A stretch of DNA of 64,000 nt, taken from contig CATNEN010000002.1 in the NCBI GenBank assembly GCA_950097015.1, positions 8,370,001-8,434,000 on the forward strand, given 5' to 3'. How positions within the stretch are numbered: the stretch's first letter is position 1; each line of letters begins with the position of its first letter. Under the pieces are notes generated by a model. It was given only the letters and a program-made list of their open reading frames with translations. It searched no databases and had not been told where the DNA came from. Below are positions 23,578 to 42,884 of the stretch, piece by piece. Source of the stretch: Macrostomum hystrix (lineage: Eukaryota; Animalia; Platyhelminthes). Position numbers and translations under genes: made by a program.

Positions 23578-26500
23578 CTGCAAAATGTGAATTTTGTTTT
23601 GAGAAATAGAAAGCAAATATAAACTAGAGTTATCTATGTGCATTCCATGGAATAAACAAATGATTAATCGAGTGCAGACTTCATTTAATTTATACATGTC
23701 CTGTTTCTACTGCTGAAAGTAATATTGAATGAACTCCAGTACTATGAAATATATAACTGCCCTAATATATTCTTTGGACTTTCTCTGCGTCCTTTGTATA
23801 GTACAATAATAATTTATAATTGATTACATCTGCCCCAATTGGGCCAGATGTGCAGCCGACAGCACAGCCGCAGCTATTGCGCGGCGCATCTTAAGGCTGC
23901 GTACAGCTGTTCAGTCCACGGACTGGGGGGACGTCACACCCACCTTCATTATCCCAGCTAATGCTGGTACCCATTTAAGAGCTGGGTGAACTGAAGCAAT
24001 GCAGAGTTAAGTGTCTCTTTCTAAAGGGCACAAATTGTTCCAGTGTAGTCGGGAATCGAACCCCCGACCTTCAAGTCGTGAGTCCGACGCCCTAACCACT
24101 AGGCTACAACCTCTTGTATAGTACAGTTTTTGACACATCATCTCCTTAGCTCACTAATCAAATTTTCTTATAACTTCTAGAAGTTACTGCAAAGCATTTA
24201 TTATAGGACGAGGAATAAAATTAAGGAAGAAGGTTGTTAAACAAAATATTAGTGAAGTTAATACCAAAAAGTGCGTGTTAATTGGTCAATAGGCAGACAT
24301 AGAAGCCAAATCAACTACACCCATTTGCTGAATGACCGGTATTTTTTTGATAGCTGAATGGGAGTTAATCTATTCCATTATTACTCTTTTAATGGAGAAA
24401 TAGTGAAAATGTACCAAGTGAAAGGTTGCTATTCATTCCATTAAATACAGAACCAAAGTGTACAGGCAGGCAATCGTATACATCCTGCAGGTTGTAACTA
24501 CGAAACACGTATTCATGTACGTTAGCGAGAAGGAAACTGGTGGAAATCTGCAGATAAATCAGAGATAGTGAAGTGCATCAACAACATCAGCGGCTCCAAT
24601 GCAAATGGGAGAGTGATTTTCCAAGCGAAAAGTAAAAACTAAATAAATAAATAGTGAAGGAGAGAAGCGACATCCATCTGACCAACTGACCAACCGGGTG
24701 AGGTCGGGCGAGAGCCCGGGTCGTCAACAAAACCTGTAGTTGTACTCCTTGGCAATTTCGGGAAGTGAATGGATACTTTTTCAGTCATTTATTCGGAAGT
24801 TTTTTAGATCGCTAATTGATCAAGTGTTAATTAGCTGGGCAATTAGTAGGTAATCGTTCTTTTAATTAGCAAGCTCAGCAAAATAAGACTGCATTGCGAA
24901 AAGGCTTTTTAACAGATGCGTGGTCTTAGACGCCTTAGTGGCCGTTTAAGATGCTCATAAGAAACTTGATTGGTGTCGAAACTCGACTGCTCACCTGCAG
25001 CTCCCACGGATCCTCCTCTTCGTCGCTGTCGGATCCTGTGGTGGTGTACTGCCCGCTGTCGACGCGCAAATCCTGTAGTCGAATCTCCGCGATAGGCAGA
25101 CCGCCTCCGAGGCCGCAACGTCCAGCGTCGGGCTCGTCGGCGTCCGCTTCGAAATCGTCTGGATTGGGATTGTCGCGCTCAACGCGACCTTCAAAGTTCT
25201 CTAAGCCACCGTCGCCGCCGTTGCGAGCGGCCGCGTCTTCCGCCTCCTGCGACTCTTCTTCAACGTAGAGCTGGCGCTGCAGAATCGAGTTCCGCTTGCC
25301 CTGGCGATGCGGCGGCTGCGGCTGCTGGCTGTCGGTGGGCATCGACGCCGGTCGGCCGTTTAACATCGGCGCTGACTCGGGCGAGGATGGCGTCGAGTTT
25401 TCGATGATCTTATCAATCGAAGTGCCGGCTGCGCCTGAAGTTGCCGCTGTTGCCGCGGCGTCCTCGACGATGGTGTCCAGAGCGGAGGACTGACGAGAAG
25501 TGCTGGGCGGCGTGCCCAGATTGTTGGTGAGGGCACTCAGCGAGCGGCGGTGCTGTGCCCCGGCGATGCCACCGAAGATGCCGGCGGACATGGCAGCCAT
25601 GGACTTCAGAGCGTTGTTGGACTGGCGCTTGCTGATGTTCACGACTGCGGTGTCATGAAGGCGGGTGAAAATGTCAGTGAAAATGATTTGTACTAGTTAA
25701 ACTTGATGGCGCTGAAAAACTGTTCGGCTGTCATTAATAAAGTCTGATCGGTGCTAAATAGTTCTAAGAATAGCCTAATCTGTAGGCGAAATCTCATTGC
25801 AGTAGAGGCATCTAGAACAAGCAGCGAGAGTTGAAGAAACCTGCGAAGATATTCGCTGTGAGCAGTCTGGGGATTGCTGTGCGCGACAACTCAACTTGCC
25901 CACCCGCAGGCGTCTGGCTAACACAGTGGCAAAAGTGCAGTCAGCCAGAGAAGCTCCTGTTACATAGCGGCAAGCCAGTGTCCAACACAATTATCCTGGG
26001 GCCTCGGGCTAGAACGGAGGCAGACTCAACACGCAGGAAAAATTGGGACAAAAGCGGGACTTGACGGACAGGCAGCTCTCTCCGACAGGAAGCTGTGGCC
26101 TCTCCTCGGATTTCTCCTCTGCGGCGCACCCACTTGAATTTCGCGCTCTTCCCTGCAGACATGGCAACTGCTGAGCCACCAAGGACTCCTGTAACTGCTG
26201 GCACTTAAAATCCATTTATCATTTTCTTGACAGTCCGGGGGGGGACAGTCCGGAAGGGACTTCTGGCCAGGGCTGAAGCAGGGCTGGTTCAAACTGTCTG
26301 CCAGTCAGCAGGGGCCCGAATCCGGCTGCCCGGTGTCTATGGGGCAGCTCTGGTGCGCGTGCACTTTTACTGCTACCTATTAAGTTGTTACTGAGTAGAA
26401 AGGAAGGTGTAGGCGAGGCTGTAGGAATCCCCGAGCGGTACAGTATTGCGCGCAGTGTCTGTCTAGAAAGGCCTGCTCTCGTACAGGTTGGCAAACGATC

Positions 26501-29500
26501 GCTTTGTTTGAACAATCGAGCTACGAAAAGAAACCTTCAGACTGACAATATGGGGCCTTGCTCAAACTCCAGACTGACAATATGGGGCCTTGCTCAAACT
26601 CCAGACTGACAATATGGGGCCTTGCTCAAACTCCAGGCTGACAATATGGGGCCTTGCTCAAACTCCAGACTGACAATATGGGGCCTTGCTCAAACTTCAG
26701 ACTGACAATATGGGGCCTTGCTCAAACTCCAGACTGACAATATGGGGCCTTGCTCAAACTCCAGACTGACAATATGGGGCCTTGCTCAAACTTCAGACTG
26801 ACAATATGGGGCCTTGCTCAAACTTCAGACTGACAATATGGGGCCTTGCTCAAACTCCAGACTGACAATATGGGGCCTTGCTCAAACTTCAGACTGACAA
26901 TATGGGGCCTTGCTCAAACTCCAGACTGACAATATGGAGCCTTGCTCAAACTCCAGACTGACAATATGGGGCCTTGCTCAAACTCCAGACTGACAATATG
27001 GGGCCTTGCTCAAACTCCAGACTGACAATATGGGGCCTTGCTCAAACTCCAGACTGACAATATGGGGCCTTGCTCAAACTCCAGACGACATTTTTCTACA
27101 CCCAGCAATCGACAAGTAATGCGTTTTGCAAGTAATGCAAGAACTAATGAAACAATCTAGAATCTTTTAAAAAGTCCATGAATTTTAATTCAGTTACGGT
27201 CGTGTCGCACGACTCACACAGGACTTACATCGTGGCTTGCAGTTCGCAATTTGTTCCTCGCCTGCACCGAGCTCTCGACAGAGCTCCTCCAGGAACAGGA
27301 TGTGCTTCTGAAGAGTTTTTCAAGAAGTTGCGGTTAAAACCAATGAGATAATGAAAAAAAATTAGCAAATATGTGACAGTAGACCCGCAGCCAGAGAGGA
27401 GGCAATTCTGCTCATTGCGCTGACTCCTGAGCACACAGGGGTGTGTACATCTGCCCTGAATTTCCCATGACGGGGCACATTTTTTGCATTGCCATTTTCT
27501 AAAATTTTACTTCGAGGCATGGGGTTGTTGGAAAATGAGCCCTCTATTGCCACGGGGCAATTAATTCTATGCAATGGCTGACGAGTGCCTGAAGGCCATT
27601 GCCTCGAAGTGAAATTTTAGGCAATGGCCATAGACAAAACTGCAAGCACGCGTATTACGCGTCAGGACAGGTGAATTGACAAAAAATCGTTTAAAATGTC
27701 GAAAAATGCCGCGCGAGCGCGAATTATTTCCAAAACCGCTTCGTTTTTTGGCAGGCCAAATCATTCGCACTAATCGTTTGATTTTGGGCTGAAAGTATTG
27801 ATTCATGATTCATATGATTCATCGCTGGCAGCGTCAAAACTGACTCCCGTGTTCCTATTTAGCCACAATTTTTCTGCTCTCCGCTCGCCAGCTCGCCCTG
27901 AGGCCACGGGAGGGCATTAGCTTAGCTGCACTCGTCCTCTAGCTCACTCATCAGCTGCCCCGGCCTCATCATCCGGCTGGATATATGCATTGCAGAGGCC
28001 CGGAGGGGAGGGCAGCTAATTACCTAACTCCAGCAGCCTGTTGCTGTTTGCTGCTGCGATTTCACATTCTCCGCGATGTGTTTGCCAATGCATTTTGCAT
28101 CGCCCGTCCAACCCCACCGCTGTCACTCTCGCTTTGGCTCTGTTTCGCTCTCCCTGACCTCACTGCATGAGTCCCTAATTAGTTCCTGATTTCTCAACTA
28201 TTTCGCCTTCTTAACCTACCGATGTTGCTAAGCATGTGGCATTCAGAGGCTACAGCCCATAGACAACACATTCAGAGGCTACAGCCCATAGACAACACAT
28301 TCAGAGGCTACAGCCCATAGACAACACATTCAGAGGCTACAGCCCATAGACAACACATTCAGAGGCTACAGCCCATAGACAACACATTCAGAGGCTACAG
28401 ACCATAGACGCCAGAATTCTAAGGCCAGATACACACAGCAAATTCAGACCCACCTCCTGCAAGTCGCGCTCAGTCTCGAGCGAGTCGCACTTCATCTCGG
28501 ACATTCGTCTGGCGCGCTTCTGCAGCTGAATACGGAACTCGCCCCGCTGTTTCTCGTGCATCATCAGGCCTGAAACGAGCAGTGAGGAGTTGGAGGCTCT
28601 TTTGGGTCGAATTGTTATTCTGAGAAATATATCTGATCCTGTACAACTAAGCTTTTTGACATTCTCATTAGCAGCGGTTGAATCCATGGCAGTTTTAAGT
28701 GATTTTTCACTACACGCGCTCATCTTCCGCATCCATCCAGAACGGCAATTTGATCTCCAGACTGGTAAATCCAGAATCAATAATGGCCACGGCTGCTGCA
28801 TCGAGCAGCAAAGTCTTTCTGCTTCATCGAAATCTGACGACTCATCTCGAGGCTGGGAGGGTGGCGGGTAGGGACGAGTGAGGGATGCCTGACTGGGCGG
28901 AACTTGGCGGCGCACAGCTGCAGCGTCTAGCAAATTGACGTTGTGGGTAGAGTCAGGAATTCTCGGCAACTCAACCGTGGCAAACGATGAGACCGCTGCC
29001 CGCGCGCGTGCGGCCTGAGAATGTCAATAACGAGCTGCCACAGCTGACTGGGCCGCACTGGGCCCGGGACGGAAGTGCCCGCATTTGGCGTCTTCACCGT
29101 TCATTTGCCAAGTGTGGCGCAGCCTCCGCTCCCCTCTCTGTCTCTCCCGCTCTGTTCTCAACTCGCTTCTGCCCTTTTAAAATCCCTTCCACGCCAACTT
29201 ATCTACCTGAAATGTCACGCTTAATTTGCCTTCTATCCATCAAAGCCCATTTTCTTCTTTATCTCAATCCCTGCACTGCGGGTTGACACAGAAATTAGTA
29301 CAAATGGCAGTTCAGGGCTTTCAGAACTTGCAGAATTTCCCAGACTAGCCCTGCCACTCGCTTACAATGGCTTACGGTGCTAATGGTGAATTAATTTTAA
29401 AGTGCATTTCAGCTCGATGCTTTATGTTGATTGGCTCAAGCGGTCTAACTAACTCCCTTCACTACTGGGAATGCAATTACAGAAACTACAAGATTCTTTT

Positions 29501-32500
29501 CTGGGATTCAATCTTCCCAGTTAGGGATTCTGTCTTCCTAGTTTGGGATTCTGTCTTCCTAGTTTGGGATTCTGTCTTTCCAGTTTGGGATTCTGTCTTT
29601 CCAGTTTGGGATTCTGTCTTTCCAGTTTGGGATTCTGTCTTCCCAGTTTGGGATTCTGTCTTTCCAGTTTGGGATTCTGTCTTTCCAGTTTGGGATTCTG
29701 GCTTTCCAGTTTGGGGTTCTGTCTTCCTAGTTTGGGATTCTATCTTCCCGGTTAGGGATTTAATTCTTGAAGGTTCGAACGACATTGTGGCGCGCGATTT
29801 TTCACGCATATTTAAACAAGGGAAATGTGACCCGATGGGAGTTGGCTAAAATAGCTCGGATTGATTTCTTGCTCAGAGATTTGTGTCCGCCAAATGTATA
29901 TAGGGCACCTGTTAGGGCGTAGGGCAAATATAAAACTGACAGAGTCGTGAGGATGTGGGATTTAGAGGCCTGAGGATTTTTTGTTGATTGACACAGTCGC
30001 AATGGCAGGCGCCACAATAACTTTGCCGATCAATTGCTGAAGTCATGCTATTTGTTTCGTGACTAGGCAGTAAGAAACTTGCAAAACTAAACTTTTACAT
30101 AACATCTCAGGGTGCTTTGATGAAGCCCACCCAATGCTAGAACAGACGAAGCTGAGAACACTGCATTCTGGGCAAAAAAGCTATGTGGATTTTCACACTC
30201 AAAATTTGTTAATCTGTTGCAGTGGACATTTCTGCGAAATGAAATTCCTGATCAGGTTTTCCAGGACCTCTTAGATGCACTTGTGAGCAGAAATGCTTTC
30301 TGTGATTCTATTGATGGCTTTTTGTTCTCCACGCGTGCTCAAATTCGAAATGCACAAAAAAATTCTAAACCCTTTTTCCTGAACGGAATCACGCCTCGAG
30401 TAACTTTTCAAAGACGCTTTGCGAAATGTACGTTTGAGAACAGACTGGCCCTTCCATGGCATAAATCGACGGTTGTAAAAGATGTTTTTGCTTTTTGTTC
30501 TGAGTTGCCTCGTTCAGGCGCAGAAAGAAATTGTCTGAGAGGAGTACATGCACTACTGATGTTAGCGCATATCTTTTTAACGGCTTTAGTGTCAAGCACT
30601 AGGGTGAGTGGCAGAGGGGTTTACGCGTTTGCCTCTCGCACCAAGGTCCCTGAGCTCGATTCGGCGGCGAGACCACATTCATTTGGGGCGCAGCTGCGAA
30701 GAGAAGGCTTGGGGGCTTGTCGTGCAATTCACGCCCTTGACGGCCAACCTCAAGGGAGTGTACAGTGAGAGTGTACACTGCCTGACGATGAGAAAGTCAG
30801 AGCAGATGTACACACCAGTTTCAGTGTGTGCCTGCTTACGGTATCTGTGTGCGTGTGTGCTCAGGAGTCAGCGAAATGAGCAGAATTGCCTCCTGGCTGG
30901 CTGCAGGTTTGTGTCACCATGTGATATGCCACTGCTCGCAGCCCTCTTGCAGTTATGTCTATTATTAATGAGTTCTTATAGTGTTATTATAGTGTTATTA
31001 TAGTGTTATTATAGTGTCAAGCATTTAGCGACGTGGCCTCAAGACATCGTATTGAAGGACATTGCTTACCGTTAATGACCCGAACGATTCGCCACAGCAG
31101 AAACAGCACCATGACAGACACTTCCGTTGACTCCAGCTTCACGAAGACAATGTCCGCCACGAACGAGATCATGATGACGACCGCATCGACGATCTGAAAT
31201 CAATAAACATGACCACGGTGTTCAATAGAGGCTGTTTTGATGCAATTTCGACAAACACAGCTCAGAAAACAAATGAGACCCGGTGGCGTGGAAGGAAGTA
31301 CAGTATTTTCTAAAATAGATGCGGTCACTGTCTATGGTTTTTAGCAGGGCGGTGGTTTGAAGCTGGAGCGGTAACGCACCAAGGTCCCGAGCTCGAATTT
31401 CGGCGAATTCGGAGGTCGCTTATTGGTCAGTGAAATAGCCCTTGACTAGCTGTGCGAAATAAATAGTGTGTGTGTCCACAGCCTGTAAATATTATTGTTA
31501 TTATTAAAGACAGGTTTTAGGTACGTATGCAGCATTTTAGATTTGTATTTTGAATCGTCAAAGCACGAGTCTGCAAGTGCTTCCCAAAGAAGTACGCGTC
31601 ATTGTGGGTTCCTGCGCTGTCCATGCGGAATGAATATTTCAGCAACCCACGGGCTGCTGGCCGTCTGTAATTTCAGACTGCACCGAAGCTGCCGACTGCA
31701 CGGTGCACCGTGGAGCCGCACCGCTGCGCCAGCTGACTTTCTAATAATTGATTGATTCATCTCACGGCATCTCCTGCCAGTCCCGGGAGACCTAGCCAAT
31801 GGGAATCGTGCTCATGATTTAATGGAAGAGAGATATGATTATCTATAGCTGGGCTCAGCCTCTGTAGTTTGTGATGGGTCTCGCTCGATTCGCAGTAGTT
31901 TACAGTTTAATAGAAGAGAGATATGATTATCTATAGCTGGGCTCAGCCTCTGTAGTTTGTGATGGGTCTCGCTCGATTCGCAGTAGTTTACAATTTAATA
32001 GAAGAGAGATATGATTATCTATAGCTGGGCTCAGCCTCTGTAGTTTGTGATGGGTCTCGCTCGATTCGCAGTAGTTTACAATTTAATAGAAGAGAGATAT
32101 GATTATCTATAGCTGGGCTCAGCCTCTGTAGTTTGTGATGGGTCTCGCTCGATTCGCAGTAGTTTACATTATATTTGTAATGATTTATTATTAACAATCA
32201 TTGGATTATTAAATTACTTTTCATTAAAATACACCTCTAATTACGAGTATTTAGAGCAGTTTTACGGAAAGCAATCGACTCAACGATTTGAGAGTACTTA
32301 AAAATTCTTTCTTTTACGACGAAATTCAGTTGCTATCTCATTGTGTCAATCATAAACAAATTTTTTTAGCTATCTAGAATAACTATAGGTGGGATTTAAC
32401 ACACTCCTGGAATGTACCGAAGAATTCAAAAGCACTAAAATATGGACAAAACAAAATCAGAACCAGTTGGATTGTCTCAGACAGGTTACAGTTCTGATCT

Positions 32501-35500
32501 TGCCATCGCTCCGAGGGCACGCGAGACAAGTCGGGGTCGGGCTGTAAACTTGCTAATTATGCCCTACTGTCCGGGGGACTTCACCTGGCTGGAGAGTGGC
32601 AAAGGCTGGCAGTCACAGGGGGTGGGCGGACTGTGCCAAGCCTGTAATAACCTGCGACAATTTCGCATTGTTACCTGGTGATTCCCTGCGTGCCTCGAAA
32701 TCTCTATAGCAATTTTAAGACCGACAGGTGGGAAGCTCCGATAGGTAATTTTTGTGGCTATTTTAGCGAGCGATGAGGTCACAGCGTCGCTGTAATTGCA
32801 TCATTTCTACGTAAAACATTCGGTCAGAAATTTTGTAACTCATAAGTTACAAAGATCTGCAATAGCACAATAACCTGCGAGTTAGAGTCTCTTTCAGTTC
32901 GGGTGAGTACAGCTAGACTACCGCCAAATCATTTGGTGACACTAGACCTGCAGCCAGCGAGGAGGCAATTCTGCCCATTCCACTGACCACGAGCACACAC
33001 GCACACAGATACCGTACACAGGCACACGCTCACACAGGTGTGTACATCTGCCTGACTTTCTGCTTAGTGTAAGCAAAGTGTAAGCAAAGGATAATTATAT
33101 GTACTTTGACTTCAGTGCCTTCAGGTGGCGCGACTTACCTCGAACTTCTCCCGCACAAAGTTGCGGCCCAGACAGACAATCTTGAGCGCCACCTCCAGCA
33201 CGAACAGGCCGAGGATGCCAATGCTGACGAAGTGCAGCACGGCAGAGACGTCGTGCAGCAGCTTGGCGTGGCTAAACTCCTGCTGGAAGTTGGCGAACAC
33301 CGACGTCGACTGGGTCCGATTGGCGCCACCGGCAGCCGCTGCGACAGTGACGGAGGCAGCAGCCGCAGCGTGTCGTCGCAACCGCGGTGGCGGCGGTATC
33401 GACGGCGGCCTCGGCGAAGCTGCTGAAGCGGCGTCCGAGCTCCCCCCGGAGGCGGTCACGTTGCAGGTAATGCTGGTGTTCTGGCTGAGTGCCAGCAGCA
33501 CGTCCACCATGCTGGCGGCGAGGCGCTCGGCAAACTGCGGCGACGAAGTCAGCTCGGGGCTGAAGGTCGGCAGGAGGAGGCCGCGCTCGCTCAGCCGACT
33601 GGCGAAGGTGCGATTCACGAACCCCGCCGTCTTGAGGAAGGCCTCCTCCAGTTCCTGCTTCTCGCCTGGTTTGTGCAGGTTTGAGCAGGTTTGAGCAGGT
33701 TTGAGCAGGTTTGAGCAGGTTTGAGCAGGTTTGAGCAGGTTTGTGCAGGTTTGAGCAGGCAGAGGTGCTCTCAGTGGTAAACTTGAAACCCCCGGAGTCC
33801 CCGTCAGAATCCTTGGGTGCCTGGTCTTTGTTCCATTTCTTCTTATTTTCAGTTCTTACAAAGAGTCGATTATCCAGGGTCCTAACACTGATCCCCAACA
33901 GTGCCGATTGTAAAACCAACTTGAAACAGCCATAAATCACCGGATAAAAGGCCTTTAGATCATTATCCGTCGAGGCTGATCCGCTGTTTTCCGATATTTC
34001 TCACTAAGCTCATATTAAACTCTCAGACCGATTTTCATCTGAGCCCGACTCTGAAATCCCTTCAGTCTCAACCAAAGTCCCGATGAAATCACACACCAGT
34101 CGACCCCGCAGGTTGCATTGTGCTTTCCACAGAACTGTGCTTTGCTCTGCCGCGGCTCAGATAGCTGAGCAGATAAGTCTATCGCAACTCAAGCTGGTCT
34201 AGATTAGCAAATTACCTGCTCACCGCTCTCAGGCTTAGAGTTAATCTGCCCCAATGTTGAATTTCTGACTCAAACTGGTTCGCTGATGACGCAAAGTACT
34301 CAAATCTTGACTTCTTGTCTTTGGTCGTGGCTTCTTTAATTTTTATTCTGACAGATTTTTGTGTTGAAAACCGTACCGTGACGAGAGACCTCTCAGATAA
34401 TCTATATTTAGATGTGCTCATGATTTCGTGTCAAAATGTATGCTCTAACTCATCTCTTACCTTACTGAAAGGGAAAGCAGCTTGAAAAAACTAAAAAAAC
34501 TCATCTCTCCCCTGTCCTCTCTCTCACCTGTCTGATATCTCCCCAGTCTCATCTCTCCCCAGTCTAATCTCTCCCCAGTCTAATCTCTCCCCAGTCTCAT
34601 CTCTCTCCAGTCTAATCTCTCCCCAGTCTCATCTCACCCTCCCTCATCTCTCTCCCGTTTCATCTCTCCACTGTCTCATCTCTCTCCTGTTTCATCTCTC
34701 CACTGTCTCATCTCTCTCCTGTCTCATCTCTCCCCAGTCTCATCTCTCTCCCCACTCTCATCTCTCTCATGTCTTATCTCTCCCCAGTCTCATCTCTCTC
34801 CTGTCTCATCTCTCCACTGTCTTATCTTTCCCCAGTCTCATCTCTCCCCAGTCTCATCTCTCCCCAGTCTCATCTCTCCACTGTCTTATCTCTCCCCAGT
34901 CTCATCTCTCTCCTGTCTCATCTCTCCACTGTCTTATCTCTCCCCAGTCTCATCTCTCCCCAGTCTCATCTCTCCCCAGTCTCATCTCTCCACTTTCTTA
35001 TCTCTCCCCAGTCTCATCTCTCTCCTGTCTCATCTCTCCACTGTCTTATCTCTCCCCAGTCTCATCTCTCCCCAGTCCCATCTCTCCCCAGTCTCATCTC
35101 TCCCCAGTCTCATCTCTCACCTGTCTGATCTCTCCCCTGTCTCATCTCTCCCCAGTCTCATCTCTCCCCAGTCTCATCTCTCCCCAGTCTCATCTCTCCC
35201 CAGTCTCATCTTTCCGCAGTCTCATCTCTTCCCTGCCTCATCCCATTGCATCGACTCAGCCATGAGGAGCCAATCTCGAGCTCGGCTAACCACCTGTTAG
35301 AAGCACACTGTACTCACGACATACTCACTGGTAATTGCCTTGATCTCCAGGATGATCTCCGCAATGACGATCACAGCATCGATGAGCACGAAGGCGCACA
35401 GGATGATCTGCACAACGTTGGACCGGATGGCGTACAGCAGCCGCTCCTTCCACCTGAAAGGGCGACCGCGAATTGAGGGGCGGCGACCACGCATCAGGAT

Positions 35501-38746: not shown

Positions 38747-39412
38747 CTGTGTAGGATAATTGAATTGAATGCGTGATAAGTTAGACATTGTGTGTTGATA
38801 AAATATATCTTCGGTGCATTTTAGCATTAAAAAAACACGTCGAGTTCAAAAGTAAGTTCAGCGCAAAGGTTAACCCAATAATTGCCAAGAATAATGCCAG
38901 GAGGAAATCTGTCTGTTTATTTGCTTTCCACAGCTTGCACCTCGGAACCACAAGTAAGCTCAGCTCAGGGCTAGATGCGGCTGAAGCTTTGCCTCGAGCG
39001 ACCCCGAGAAGCGGCCGGGGGCGGAGCGAACAGCTGCAGGACGTCCCAACCAAGGATTCAGGGAGCAGCGAGGGGGGTAGGGAGTGGGAAATTTGTTGAG
39101 GTCGCCGATCTGGAAGGGATTTCGGGAGCAATTAACCATGACCTCGGATTCGGCTGGCGCAGATTCATCCTTCAAAGCATTGCGGAGGATGAATCCGCAC
39201 CGATTGTTTTGCAGATTGCCCTTTGGCGAGTGATGAAGTGTCGCTGGCCTTCAATGATGCCCGATCTTTGACTTTGGCCTACAGTTAGCACTGGCGTCGA
39301 GTATCGGGGCTTCCCCCAGCCCTCCGGCTGCCTCATGAGTGAAGTTCAGGCTATGATTTGCATAGCCATGATTGATGTGTTTGGGAGCGCAGCCTGCTGA
39401 CACATAGATCCA

Positions 39413-40816
39413 TGTATCTATCCATCTGTCTATCCATCTGTCTATCCATCTGTCTATCCATCTGTCTATCCATCTGTCTATCCATCTGTCTATCCATCTG
39501 TCTATCCATCTGTCTATCCATCTGTCTATCCATCTGTCTATCCATCTATCTATCCATCTGTCTATCCATCTGTCTATCCATCTGTCTATCCATCTGTCTA
39601 TCCATCTGTCTATCCATCTGTCTATCCATCTGTCTATCCATCTGTCTATCCATCTGTCTATCCATCTGTCTATCCATCTGTCTATCCATCTGTCTATCCA
39701 TCTGTCTATCCATCTGTCTATCCGTCTGTCTATCCATCTGTCTATCCATCTGTCTATCCATCTGTCTATCCATCTGTCTATCCATCTGTCTATCCGTCTG
39801 TCTATCCATCTGTCTATCCATCTGTCTATCCATCTGTCTATCCATCTGTCTATCCATCTGTCTATCCATCTGTCTATCCATCTGTCTATCCATCTGTCTA
39901 TCCATCTGTCTATCCATCTGTCTATCCATCTGTCTATCCATCTGTCTATCCATCTGTCTATCCATCTGTCTATCCATCTGTCTATCCATCTGTCTATCCA
40001 TCTGTCTATCCATCTGTCTATCCATCTGTCTATCCATCTGTCTATCCATCTGTCTATCCATCTGTCTATCCATCTGTCTATCCGTCTGTCTATCCATCTG
40101 TCTATCCATCTGTCTATCCATCTGTCTATCCATCTGTCTATCCATCTGTCTATCCATCTGTCTATCCATCTGTCTATCCATCTGTCTATCCATCTGTCTA
40201 TCCATCTGTCTATCCATCTATCTATCCATCTATCTATCCATCTGTCTATCCATCTGTCTATCCATCTGTCTATCCATCTGTCTATCTGTCTATCTATCCA
40301 TCTGTCTATCTGTCTGTCTATCCATCTGTCTATCCATCTATCTATCCATCTGTCTATCCATCTATCTATCCATCTGTCTATCCATCTGTCTATCCATCTG
40401 TCTATCCATCTGTCTATCCATCTGTCTATCCATCTATCTATCCATCTGTCTATCCATCTGTCTATCCATCTGTCTATCCATCTGTCTATCCGTCTGTCTA
40501 TCCATCTGTCTATCCATCTGTCTATCCATCTGTCTATCCATCTGTCTATCCATCTGTCTATCCATCTGTCTATCCATCTGTCTATCCATCTATCTATCCA
40601 TCTGTCTATCCATCTGTCTATCCATCTGTCTATCCATCTGTCTATCCGTCTGTCTATCCATCTGTCTATCCATCTGTCTATCCATCTATCTATCCATCTG
40701 TCTATCCATCTGTCTATCCATCTGTCTATCCATCTATCTATCCATCTGTCTATCCATCTGTCTATCCATCTGTCTATCCATCTGTCTATTCATCTGTCTA
40801 TCCATCTGTCTATCCA
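39413..40816. repeat. 12-bp GATA/GACA-type repeat TCTATCCATCTG
   Basis: About 117 copies. Confidence 0.97.
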
Positions 40817-42884
40817 TGAGAGGTGAGTTTAGGACTTCAATTCAGCTTTTCTTAAAATATCTCATGCCACACAGAATGCATTTTCTAAACAAGCTAGGTA
40901 AGAAAGATGAAGAAGACATTTCTGTTGGCTTGAGGAAAGACTGGTCCGTGTTATTTGTCCACATGAGTGATCAAAATAAGCCTCATTCGTCTCGCTACAT
41001 ATTGAGCACTGGGCATTAGACTGGTCTTTAAGTGCAAAAGAAACTTTATCGCTCTTCAGTCTTGACAGAGAATGGGTTGCAGGCTCAGCAAACGCCAGTC
41101 TGCTTCAAGCTAAACTTAATTCGAAAGTGTTTTAATAGGCATGAAAAATGTGAAAGCACTTTTCAGATTTCTACGGGAGTAGTAGAAAACTCTCATTTTT
41201 CTTGGGGTTTTTAAAAGCCTAATTATCACAAAAGCGGCAGACTTGTTAAGACTTCCGAGCTAAATGTTCACAAAGTTCTGCAATACGCAAAATTAATCTT
41301 CGGGGAACGTCGCAGGCGATCGAAAAGGATGAGGTGAAGGCAGCACTTTACAATGGCGGAAAATATAAAGTGCTTTTATTGCGCCTTCAGTTATTCTTTG
41401 CTCGGCTTCATTGCCAGCACTGACGAGAGCGCACGCGGCCGCCCCGGGGCCACTAGAAAAGTTGCAACAACTGAAAACGCTGCCGCAAAAATACATGCGG
41501 TAGTGGAAAATGCACTCTCCGATCGCCTTCTCTCTTGTGCTTTTCATCCCCAAATTATGGGGAGGCTGATCCCACCGCGGCCACCAAGTGACGCTGGTTA
41601 CCGTCGGCGGACATCTGCTGCGCTGTCTTTTCAACATGCAGGCAGCGTGGTGATCGGCATAAAGCTGAGCCTTTGTTAGTTCATTCACCAATTTTGAATT
41701 GGTACAGGCGGGTGGAGAGACGAACCGGACTGCACATTGAGGAATTCCTGCGTCTGCGTGTTGTAGAAGCTCGTTTTGTCACCTCGAATCTGCGCCAATT
41801 TTTTGTTCTGGACCTTGGACCCGGGTTTCCAACACAGAATCTCTACCTGTTTTACCAAGACGATCGGACCTACCGCTTTGTTAAACTTACCGAAGAAAAC
41901 TATTCGTGATATCGATAGGCGGCACTGATAGCCAGCAAGGTACGAGTAGGAGGCGAACAGTGAGTTCGGATGAGGCTGCATGCAGCTATAACTGTTGGGT
42001 TGCCGAAATTTAAAGTTCAATGTTTGTTTACTGACATTTCCCATATCCTTTCGAAGCTATAATTGCTGGCGATTGGTTGATTACGTCGAATTTCGGCCTG
42101 TCTTTACCTGGCCATGGCTAGATTAAAACTAGACATCTGCACGCAACGAGAGGTAACGTTTAGGAGATGTGCCTGGCGTACTTGACAAAGTTTTCTTGTT
42201 TTTTAGCATTGCTTTCCTCTCCTTACGAGGATCTGTAAGTGCTTCTACTAAAACTAAAATTTACTTTCAGAACTACCTGTCTAAAGACGAGTTAGAGAAC
42301 TAAACCCGACGTGACCATTTTGTGTGTCTCCTGAAGCAAGTGCGCCGTACACCGTACACCTTGCATAGCCCTATTAAGATAAGCAAGGCTAGTCTAGTTG
42401 CTATGGAAGATCATCTGTCTGCTGAATATGTGAGTTTAGACTTGGCTTTCCTAAGCGGCTGCAGTTATGCAGTTTTTGGGTTTGAAACGCTGCATAAAAA
42501 TGACATCCTGGAAAATTATAGCCTGAAAAAACCTGGTAATTGGCGACCGCCACCACTTCTCCGTGTAAACTTTACAGATGAAGAAATTCGAACTTCTGCC
42601 GTCCATAATTTGGTTCTATCGTGGAATTCCGCAGTGGGCTGGAGAGGACGAGAATGAACAAATCAAGTGCTGAATATGCTCGCTTACGAGTTTATGCTGC
42701 TGACCACGGGAATAGGAGAAAGCTATCTGTAATGACTCAGCAACTAGGCCGCGTTTAGAGTGCGAGAAAGAACGTGAGTCAGACTGCGATATTAAATATC
42801 TATTTGGATGTACGCACAATCGATGGGCACTAGGCGTACAACGTGCAAGCACAAGGTGTGAGAGACAAAGAACGATGGAAGTAG

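What the first reader, a model, noticed from the sequence alone, without database searches (positions are those of the whole stretch)
31070..31193. Hv-type proton channel with only two S4 arginines (LLWRIVRVING)
Seen: S4 reads VLFLLWRIVRVING. The first gating Arg of the Hv signature RxWRxxR (human R205) is Leu (CTG at 31098-31100). Other hallmarks are intact: S1 Asp (D112 equivalent, 35378-35380), the E119, H140, F150, E153, K157, D174, D185, W207 and N214 equivalents. Established: the S1 Asp confers proton selectivity and S4 arginines carry gating charge. I recall a two-Arg LPWRxxR motif in the molluscan Hv3 family associated with proton leak (from memory, should be checked). Inference: a weakly voltage-dependent, shifted or leak-type proton channel with a Leu rather than Pro variant, possibly a separate lineage.
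Basis: partly seen in the sequence, partly recalled or inferred. Interest (0 to 1): 0.78.

Follow-up and report, generated by a model that had tools for sequence, protein, structure and literature searches.

The report
Flatworm proton channel lacking first arginine

Summary
Observation confirmed. The minus-strand exon at 31070-31193 encodes S3-S4 of an Hv-type voltage sensor. Leu (CTG, 31098-31100) sits where human Hv1 has R205. The S1 Asp, E119, H140, F150, E153, K157, D174, D185, W207, R208, R211 and N214 equivalents are present.

It is not an assembly error or a pseudogene. A DNA contig and spliced RNA-type contigs carry the exon unchanged. Three old paralogues in the genome all read LLWRIVR, with synonymous Leu codons (dN/dS 0.05-0.11).

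It is also not a new lineage. LLWRxxR is the commonest S4 motif of a spiralian group that includes cestodes, trematodes, an annelid, a nemertean, a brachiopod and a bryozoan. Its members have a long S1-S2 loop and a long C-terminal tail. In a tree built without the motif columns, this group is sister to the molluscan Hv3 (xPWRxxR, AcHv3) group, and together they form one R1-less clade (support 100/90).

The same genome also has a canonical RLWRVVR Hv1 on another contig.

Function is inferred, not shown: a proton-selective channel with reduced gating charge.

Verdict: new member of a known kind, moderate interest. It is a natural "R1 lost, no proline" test case for the AcHv3 leak.

The parts
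35329..35453 (-). Exon encoding the end of the N-terminus and S1, with the selectivity-filter Asp
   Evidence: Acceptor TTTCAG|G and donor A|GTGAGT. Aligns to S1 of human Hv1 and 3WKV. Conserved in all three paralogues.
35378..35380 (-). GAT codon, the Asp equivalent to human D112 (proton selectivity filter)
   Evidence: The alignment places query residue 25 against D112 of 5OQK.
33139..33665 (-). Exon encoding an extracellular S1-S2 loop of about 130 residues (four N-x-S/T sequons) and S2 (H140, F150, E153, K157 equivalents)
   Evidence: Exon limits, matched exactly by spliced contigs (records 9, 20 and 21). The join is confirmed by M. lignano proteins P0001 and P0002. The first sequon keeps N-x-S/T in all paralogues and in M. 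lignano.
31070..31193 (-). Exon encoding S3, a short S3-S4 loop and S4 (motif LLWRIVR, then VIN)
31098..31100 (-). CTG codon, Leu at the position of the first gating arginine (human R205)
   Evidence: The paralogues use CTA at the same site. No variant was reported in any run.
28454..28569 (-). Exon encoding the helix that continues S4 into the cytoplasm (start of the predicted coiled coil)
   Evidence: A spliced contig joins it to the S4 exon. It is 87-95% identical in the paralogues and identical in register to P0002.
27229..27307 (-). Exon encoding the rest of the coiled-coil region and the conserved C-K-P motif
   Evidence: Conserved block in the paralogues and consensus splice sites. Not checked against reads.
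24935..25644 (-). Last coding exon: a cytoplasmic tail of about 235 residues, then the stop codon
   Evidence: Open frame in phase with the previous exon. Its first third is conserved in the paralogues. No Pfam domain. Limits are inferred and not checked against reads.

Best explanation
The exon belongs to an expressed, intact, multi-exon gene of a Macrostomum-type flatworm. [quoted passage not shown]

Shown: the protein has S1-S4 with no pore domain. It has an extracellular S1-S2 loop of about 130 residues with glycosylation sequons, an S4 that reads L-L-W-R-x-x-R, and about 300 cytoplasmic residues after S4. This branch is a spiralian clade. Its proline-free subgroup (this gene, other flatworms, a nemertean, a brachiopod) is sister to the molluscan Hv3 subgroup, which has Pro before the Trp. 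The gene coexists with a canonical RLWRVVR Hv1 in the same genome.

Inferred: the post-S4 helix that starts those 300 residues is a coiled coil. Asp in S1, the Trp, R2, R3, the charge-transfer centre (F150, E153, D174) and D185 and N214 are all kept, so the protein most likely still conducts protons selectively through its voltage sensor, as a coiled-coil dimer. With only two arginines per S4 it should move at most about two thirds of the usual gating charge. That predicts a shallower conductance-voltage curve. In the resting state a neutral Leu, not Arg, would sit at the hydrophobic gasket. Whether this gives the closed-state leak seen in AcHv3, or only shallower and shifted gating, cannot be told from sequence. 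One of the two Zn-binding histidines (H193) is absent, so weaker Zn2+ block is expected.
For: Anatomy and hallmarks.
Expression and splicing: spliced contigs in two runs join the S2, S3-S4 and post-S4 exons exactly at the predicted limits with no differences.
Selection: three paralogues with dS above 1 and dN/dS 0.05-0.11; the Leu codon varies synonymously (CTG, CTA, CTA).
Family: a profile search of 1.84 billion proteins gave 493 hits. The top hits are flatworm 'voltage-gated hydrogen channel 1' proteins with LLWR or LIWR motifs, then annelid, nemertean, brachiopod and bryozoan ones.
Tree: built with the two motif columns removed. R1-less proteins lie on one side of a branch (100/90). The flatworm clade has 100/99, the proline-free group 98/87, and the proline group containing AcHv3 has 93/86.
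Rooting: the canonical side includes sponge, cnidarian, echinoderm, hemichordate and vertebrate proteins, so the root lies there.
Group features: loop median 135 residues and tail median 232, against 10 and 66 in canonical Hv.
Canonical paralogue in the same genome.
Function of the nearest characterised relative: AcHv3 is proton selective, leaky and weakly voltage dependent (PMC10911540). R205H shuttles protons in closed hHv1, which places R1 at the thin barrier (PMC6754559).
Against: No member of the proline-free group has been recorded electrically. AcHv3's behaviour may be due to its proline, which this protein lacks. The S2 alignment to human Hv1 is statistically weak on its own. The tree uses the M. 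lignano orthologue P0001 as a stand-in for the window's gene, has only 144 columns, and its bootstrap had not fully settled. TMEM266 and VSP sequences could not be retrieved, so they are not in the tree. The long tail and loop are of unknown function. Subcellular location is unknown; AcHv3 carries retention motifs.
Confidence: 0.75

Rival explanations
1. It gates much like a canonical Hv1. Loss of R1 only lowers the slope and shifts the threshold, with no closed-state leak. On this view the AcHv3 leak is caused by the helix-breaking proline, which this protein lacks.
For: The residue before Trp is Leu, the usual residue in canonical RLWRxxR (77 of 82 canonical representatives). A Leu at R1 keeps the gasket region hydrophobic. 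The AcHv3 authors could not separate the effect of R1 loss from that of the proline (PMC10911540).
Against: AcHv3, the only R1-less channel recorded, is leaky and has a slope of about 60 mV per e-fold. Strong conservation of a non-basic R1 across phyla, beside a canonical paralogue in the same genome, suggests a distinct functional niche rather than a neutral variant.
Confidence: 0.3
2. It no longer conducts protons. Like vertebrate TMEM266 (HVRP1), it is a voltage sensor that signals through its long cytoplasmic tail.
For: It has a long tail after the coiled coil with no recognisable domain, as described for hTMEM266. The review's supplement lists the Lingula member of the same group (P0020) under the title 'transmembrane protein C15orf27 homolog'.
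Against: hTMEM266 has Val at the S1 filter, Met at D185, three S4 arginines and Asp at N214 (PMC6392501). This protein has Asp, Asp, two arginines and Asn. Its large-loop relative AcHv3 does conduct protons.
Confidence: 0.1
3. The Leu is an assembly or sequencing error, or the locus is a decaying pseudogene copy.
For: None was found. The only odd S4 is in the public M. lignano model P0001, which reads LLCAHCR and looks garbled.
Against: An independent short-read contig and spliced transcript-type contigs carry the exon with no differences. Three paralogues and M. lignano P0002 have the same motif. dN/dS is 0.05-0.11. All exons are open and in phase.
Confidence: 0.01

Closest known systems
AcHv3 of Aplysia californica and the molluscan Hv3 ('unconventional') proton channels (Chaves et al. 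2023, PMC10911540; review PMC10377628)
   Same: R1 is replaced by Leu. The S1 Asp, Trp, R2 and R3 are kept. [quoted passage not shown] Both lie in one R1-less clade.
   Different: Leu, not Pro, precedes the Trp (LLWR against LPWR). The gene falls in the sister, proline-free group. The loop is about 130 residues against 299, and the tail about 300 against 535. A C-K/R-P motif after the coiled coil occurs in 12 of 22 proline-free representatives and in none of 39 proline-type ones. It has not been recorded electrically.
Flatworm proteins annotated 'voltage-gated hydrogen channel 1' (Hymenolepis, Rodentolepis, Spirometra, Sparganum, Clonorchis, Fasciola; M. lignano A0A1I8HS36 and A0A1I8F401)
   Same: Closest relatives (E 1e-47 to 1e-35). 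They share the L-L/I-W-R-x-x-R motif, the S1 Asp and long loops and tails. The flatworm clade has support 100/99. The M. lignano S4 motif is identical.
   Different: These are automatic annotations. I found no publication that comments on their missing R1. The review describes only two Schistosoma channels with long S3-S4 loops, and lists a Macrostomum accession without comment.
Canonical Hv1 (HVCN1), for example human Hv1 (PDB 5OQK) and the RLWRVVR gene of this same genome (contig C1)
   Same: A four-helix voltage sensor without a pore domain, with D112, E119, H140, F150, E153, K157, D174, D185, W207, R208, R211 and N214. The intron sits at the same place just after the Asn codon.
   Different: R205 is Leu. 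H193 is absent. The S1-S2 loop is about 130 residues against about 10-16, and there are about 300 residues after S4 against about 60.
TMEM266 / HVRP1 (C15orf27)
   Same: An Hv-related voltage sensor with a coiled coil and a long disordered tail.
   Different: TMEM266 lacks the S1 Asp (V111) and D185 (M185), keeps three S4 arginines, has Asp at the N214 position and does not conduct protons (PMC6392501). This protein differs at all four residue positions, and its conduction is untested.

Membership tests
Hv (voltage-gated proton channel) family | Four transmembrane helices S1-S4 with no S5-S6 pore domain | tested here: met
   The exons encode S1, S2 and S3-S4, then a cytoplasmic helix and tail. 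Full-length relatives match Pfam Ion_trans only over the S2-S4 part.
Hv (voltage-gated proton channel) family | Acidic selectivity-filter residue in mid-S1 (human D112) | tested here: met
   Asp at 35378-35380 aligns with D112. It is kept in all three paralogues.
Hv (voltage-gated proton channel) family | S4 signature RxWRxxR | tested here: not met
   S4 reads LLWRIVR: Trp, R2 and R3 are present and R1 is Leu. This is the same departure as in AcHv3, which is accepted as an Hv.
Hv (voltage-gated proton channel) family | Charge-transfer centre and counter-charges (F150, E153, D174, D185, E119) | tested here: met
   The S2 residues rest on an ungapped register, and the match is weak.
Hv (voltage-gated proton channel) family | Proton-selective, voltage- and pH-gradient-dependent current | not testable with these tools
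   Needs electrophysiology.
Molluscan Hv3 (xPWRxxR) group | Non-basic residue at R1 | tested here: met
   Leu.
Molluscan Hv3 (xPWRxxR) group | Proline directly before the S4 Trp | tested here: not met
   Leu in the window, in both paralogues and in M. lignano.
Molluscan Hv3 (xPWRxxR) group | Very large S1-S2 loop and large intracellular domain | tested here: met
   A loop of about 130 residues and about 300 residues after S4. The group medians are similar.
Molluscan Hv3 (xPWRxxR) group | Falls inside the proline-type clade in a tree | tested here: not met
   It falls in the sister proline-free group (98/87). The two groups together form the R1-less clade (100/90).
TMEM266 / HVRP1 | Non-polar residues at the D112 and D185 positions, three S4 arginines, Asp at the N214 position (PMC6392501) | tested here: not met
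   This protein has Asp, Asp, two arginines and Asn.
TMEM266 / HVRP1 | Groups with TMEM266 in a tree | not tested
   No TMEM266 sequence could be retrieved. The word search with the Lingula relative found only itself.
Voltage-sensing phosphatase (VSP) | Cytoplasmic PTEN-like phosphatase domain after S4 | tested here: not met
   The 235-residue tail has no Pfam match. The S1 Asp and S4 Trp are present, and the review says Ci-VSP has neither (PMC10377628).

The most novel reading that the evidence does not exclude
The proline-free R1-less channels of flatworms and other spiralians may be a functionally distinct class. They could be proton conductances that stay partly open at rest, or that have a very shallow voltage dependence. 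Such channels would work beside the canonical Hv1 of the same animal. Their behaviour would show that loss of R1 alone, without the proline, is enough for the AcHv3-type leak.
Probability: 0.25. Interest if true: 0.6.

Novelty: new member of a known kind. Interest (0 to 1): 0.4.

Why it matters
The only R1-less proton channel recorded so far, AcHv3, differs from canonical channels in two ways at once: R1 is lost and a proline precedes the Trp. Its authors could not say which change causes the proton leak and the weak voltage dependence.

The flatworm channel is a natural version with only the first change. It is conserved under strong purifying selection, and the same genome holds a canonical Hv1 that can serve as an internal control. 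Recording it, together with a Leu-to-Arg variant, would test directly how much R1 contributes to gating charge and to sealing the closed pore.

The tree also gives a simple history: one loss of R1 early in Spiralia, with the proline gained later on the line leading to the molluscan channels. This agrees with the sketch in the 2023 review, extends it to Platyhelminthes, and shows that the large-loop forms outside molluscs also lack R1.

Macrostomum is a laboratory model with transgenesis and RNAi (my own knowledge, not checked here). If so, a role in the animal could be tested.

Tried and rejected
Pfam scans of the single exons found nothing useful because the pieces are too short.

The word-index protein search with the exon-B open frame returned only two M. 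lignano proteins. The same search with the Lingula relative returned only itself. It is too insensitive for this family, so TMEM266 and VSP could not be brought into the tree. I did not use the third search.

My first motif classification mislabelled two canonical proteins as R1-less. I corrected this before the final tree.

A first alignment with exon fragments as rows misplaced the S1 exon, so I dropped it in favour of P0001 plus P0002.

Assembly error and pseudogene were rejected.

An RNA fold of the S4 codons gave z = -0.5, so nothing suggests an RNA element.

A tRNA-like stretch at 23807-24118 was not called by ARAGORN.

Exons were searched one by one by reference, and the public M. lignano proteins stood in for the joined protein.

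Full report
**1. What is at the coordinates**

On the minus strand, 31193..31070 is an exon with an AG acceptor and a GTAAG donor. It translates to 41 residues that end in the motif LFLLWRIVRVIN.

phmmer against all PDB chains finds only two matches: human Hv1 (5OQK, E 5e-4) and the mouse Hv1 chimera (3WKV). Both align end to end with S3-S4.

With the 5OQK chain offset of 79, the exon supplies D174, D185, W207, R208, R211 and N214. Leu faces R205. No basic residue lies further out in S4 that could replace R1. The residues after N214 keep the K221 and R223 positions.

**2. The gene**

Comparison with two paralogous loci and reading of the splice sites give these minus-strand exons:
- 35453..35329: S1
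- 33665..33139: S1-S2 loop and S2
- 31193..31070: S3-S4
- 28569..28454: post-S4 helix
- 27307..27229: rest of the coiled-coil region
- 25644..24935: tail and stop codon

All exons are in phase. That makes about 560 residues, plus whatever the 5' exons add. I did not re-examine them.

S1 aligns with human S1, with V109, D112 (window 35378-35380), E119 and K125 conserved and Glu at D123. S2 lines up without gaps with human residues 136-171, which gives H140, F150, E153, K157 and E171. The phmmer match for that piece alone is weak (E 1.3), so this part rests on direct reading.

The S3-S4 loop is short and has no histidine at the H193 position.

The S1-S2 loop is about 130 residues long and has four N-x-S/T sequons. 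The first sequon is kept in all paralogues and in M. lignano, which fits an extracellular, glycosylated loop. About 300 residues follow S4. The last 235 have no Pfam domain.

**3. Is it real and in use?**

Contigs of public runs were laid on 28300-33800.
- A DNA-run contig covers 30988-31854 with no differences.
- A 2212-nt contig of run X2 lies on 28454-28568, 31069-31193 and 33139-33665 in direct succession, with no differences.
- A contig of run X3 joins 31082-31193 to 33139-33324.

Those are the predicted exon limits, so the mRNA exists and carries the Leu codon. No variant was listed inside the exon in any run. These are assembled contigs, so rare variants cannot be excluded. The DNA run may also be the sample the assembly came from.

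**4. Conservation within the genome**

The 220-Mb assembly holds three copies of the S3-S4 exon and of the S1 exon, on contigs C2 (this window), C29 and C38. All three read LFLLWRIVRVIN.

At the DNA level the exon differs at many third codon positions. The R1-position Leu is CTG, CTA and CTA in the three copies.

Over 195 aligned codons of S1, S2, S3-S4 and the coiled coil, dS is 1.1-1.6 and dN/dS is 0.05-0.11. These are old paralogues under strong purifying selection.

The C29 copy is nearly identical in the core to two UniRef proteins of Macrostomum lignano named 'Voltage-gated hydrogen channel 1'. This identifies the organism as a congener of M. lignano and shows that the paralogues predate that species split. 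One of the two public models (P0001) has a garbled S4, LLCAHCR. The other (P0002) has the same LLWRIVR motif.

**5. The wider family**

A profile of the two M. lignano proteins was run against 1.84 billion representative proteins. It gave 493 hits at E below 1e-3.

Among the best 150 representatives:

| S4 type | Representatives | Median S1-S2 loop | Median tail after S4 |
|---|---|---|---|
| Canonical RxWRxxR | 82 | 10 residues | 66 residues |
| Non-basic R1, then Pro (LP 30, VP 8) | 39 | 130 | 214 |
| Non-basic R1, no Pro (LL 13, LI 4, others 5) | 22 | 135 | 232 |

The source names of the closest hits are:
- cestodes: Hymenolepis, Rodentolepis, Spirometra, Sparganum, Hydatigera
- trematodes: Clonorchis, Fasciola
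- a monogenean: Cichlidogyrus
- an annelid: Owenia
- a nemertean: Tubulanus
- a brachiopod: Lingula
- a bryozoan: Bugula

The 980-residue Aplysia protein P0059 is of the proline type and has a 294-residue loop. By length and loop size it is AcHv3 (PMC10911540).

**6. Tree**

The tree used 96 representatives that hold both S1 and S2-S4. The R1 column and the column next to it were removed. It was built with IQ-TREE under LG+C20.
- All R1-less proteins lie on one side of a branch, with support 100/90.
- Inside that side, the flatworm proteins form a clade (100/99). M. lignano P0001 stands in there for the window's gene.
- The flatworm clade joins the nemertean, the brachiopod and one unnamed protein (98/87).
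- This proline-free group is sister to the proline group that holds AcHv3 (93/86).
- One bivalve protein (Dreissena) has lost the proline secondarily.

The canonical side contains sponge, cnidarian, echinoderm, hemichordate, turtle and bivalve proteins. The root must therefore lie there, and the R1-less set is a clade whose named members are all spiralians.

Caveats: the alignment has only 144 columns, the bootstrap had not fully settled, and TMEM266 and VSP are absent.

**7. A canonical channel in the same genome**

A profile of twelve canonical cores was searched against the genome. It found the three R1-less loci and one much stronger match on contig C1 (E 1e-23).

That match is a single exon encoding S1-S4. 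It has an S1 Asp, a short S1-S2 loop and an S4 that reads LRLWRVVRIVNS. Its best local matches are all canonical proteins. Its donor site sits right after the Asn codon, the same place as in the window's gene.

So this animal has one canonical Hv1 and three R1-less channels, much as Aplysia has AcHv1 and AcHv2 beside AcHv3.

**8. What is known**

AcHv3 lacks R1 (L429) and has P430. It is proton selective. It shows a large proton-selective leak and a slope of about 60 mV per e-fold, against 4-6 mV for AcHv1 and AcHv2. The authors could not separate the effect of the lost arginine from that of the proline (PMC10911540).

The 2023 review (PMC10377628) describes 'unconventional' channels with large loops and tails. 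It says that in Annelida, Bryozoa and Nemertea such channels lack the S4 proline. For Platyhelminthes it mentions only two Schistosoma channels with long S3-S4 loops. Its supplement lists a Macrostomum accession without comment. The machine-read sequences in that supplement are unreliable at highlighted residues, so I did not use them.

A 2012 paper lists HVCN1 homologues in the M. lignano transcriptome (PMC3447372). I found no paper that records any proline-free member.

**9. How it most likely works**

Shown: the anatomy, expression, selection and family placement described above.

Inferred from established Hv1 knowledge:
- The S1 Asp with R2 and R3 forms the proton selectivity filter, and the S4 arginines carry the gating charge.
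- R1 lies at the thin hydrophobic barrier in the closed channel, since R205H shuttles protons at negative voltage (PMC6754559).
- A channel with Leu there should still be proton selective.
- It should move at most about two thirds of the normal charge.
- It should have a different resting-state energy.

Leak is possible but not predicted with confidence, because Leu keeps the barrier hydrophobic and the helix-breaking proline is absent. Weaker Zn2+ block is expected from the missing H193. The post-S4 helix probably forms the dimer coiled coil, by position and homology; I did not test this.

**10. Rivals**

- Near-canonical gating without leak: 0.3.
- A non-conducting TMEM266-like sensor: 0.1. 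It is contradicted by the hallmark residues that hTMEM266 lacks (PMC6392501).
- Artefact or pseudogene: refuted.

**11. Verdict**

The motif is the norm of a catalogued but functionally unstudied spiralian group, not a new lineage. I rate it a new member of a known kind, with moderate interest as a clean natural experiment on R1.

Noticed in passing
G000:C1:21502355-21502597 (+); locus L011:1357-1749: A canonical Hv1 gene in the same genome. S1-S4 lie in one exon, the S1-S2 loop is short, S1 has Asp, and S4 reads LRLWRVVRIVNS. The donor site sits right after the Asn codon, as in the window's gene.
   Followed up: partly
window 30600-30900 and 32930-33050: Intronic stretches with read-contig depth around a million against about 80 for the flanks, and with many variant joints. 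This is a very high-copy interspersed repeat. Copies also lie near 27373-27437, in an intron.
   Followed up: no
window 34769-35128 (+) and L011:179-1357: A minisatellite that reads in frame as serine, proline and leucine-rich repeats (SHLSPVSSLP-like). It lies in the intron between the S1 and S2 exons and also just upstream of the canonical Hv1 exon on contig C1. It creates long spurious open frames.
   Followed up: no
window 39351-41019: A long 12-nt-unit (tetrapeptide) tandem repeat. It reads as (MDRQ)n on one strand and as a CLSI-type repeat on the other, and gives false ORFs of up to 535 residues.
   Followed up: no
window 23807-24118 (-): A block about 82% identical to a stretch at the C29 paralogue, but out of order there. 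It starts with a tRNA-like sequence, so it may be a tRNA-derived SINE. ARAGORN did not call a tRNA.
   Followed up: partly
public protein P0001 (M. lignano A0A1I8F401): Its S4 reads LLCAHCRVING where the sister model P0002 and all three loci here read LLWRIVRVING. This is probably a local frame error in that assembly or gene model.
   Followed up: partly
proline-free group, 30-130 residues after the S4 Trp (window exon 27229-27307): A C-K/R-P motif after the coiled coil is present in 12 of 22 proline-free representatives and in none of 39 proline-type or 82 canonical ones. It could serve as a marker of this group.
   Followed up: partly
P0013 (Cichlidogyrus, a monogenean) and P0026 (unnamed): Two relatives depart further from the motif. 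One appears to lack the S4 Trp (LFLRVLR). The other has Gln at the R2 position (LLWQIVR).
   Followed up: no
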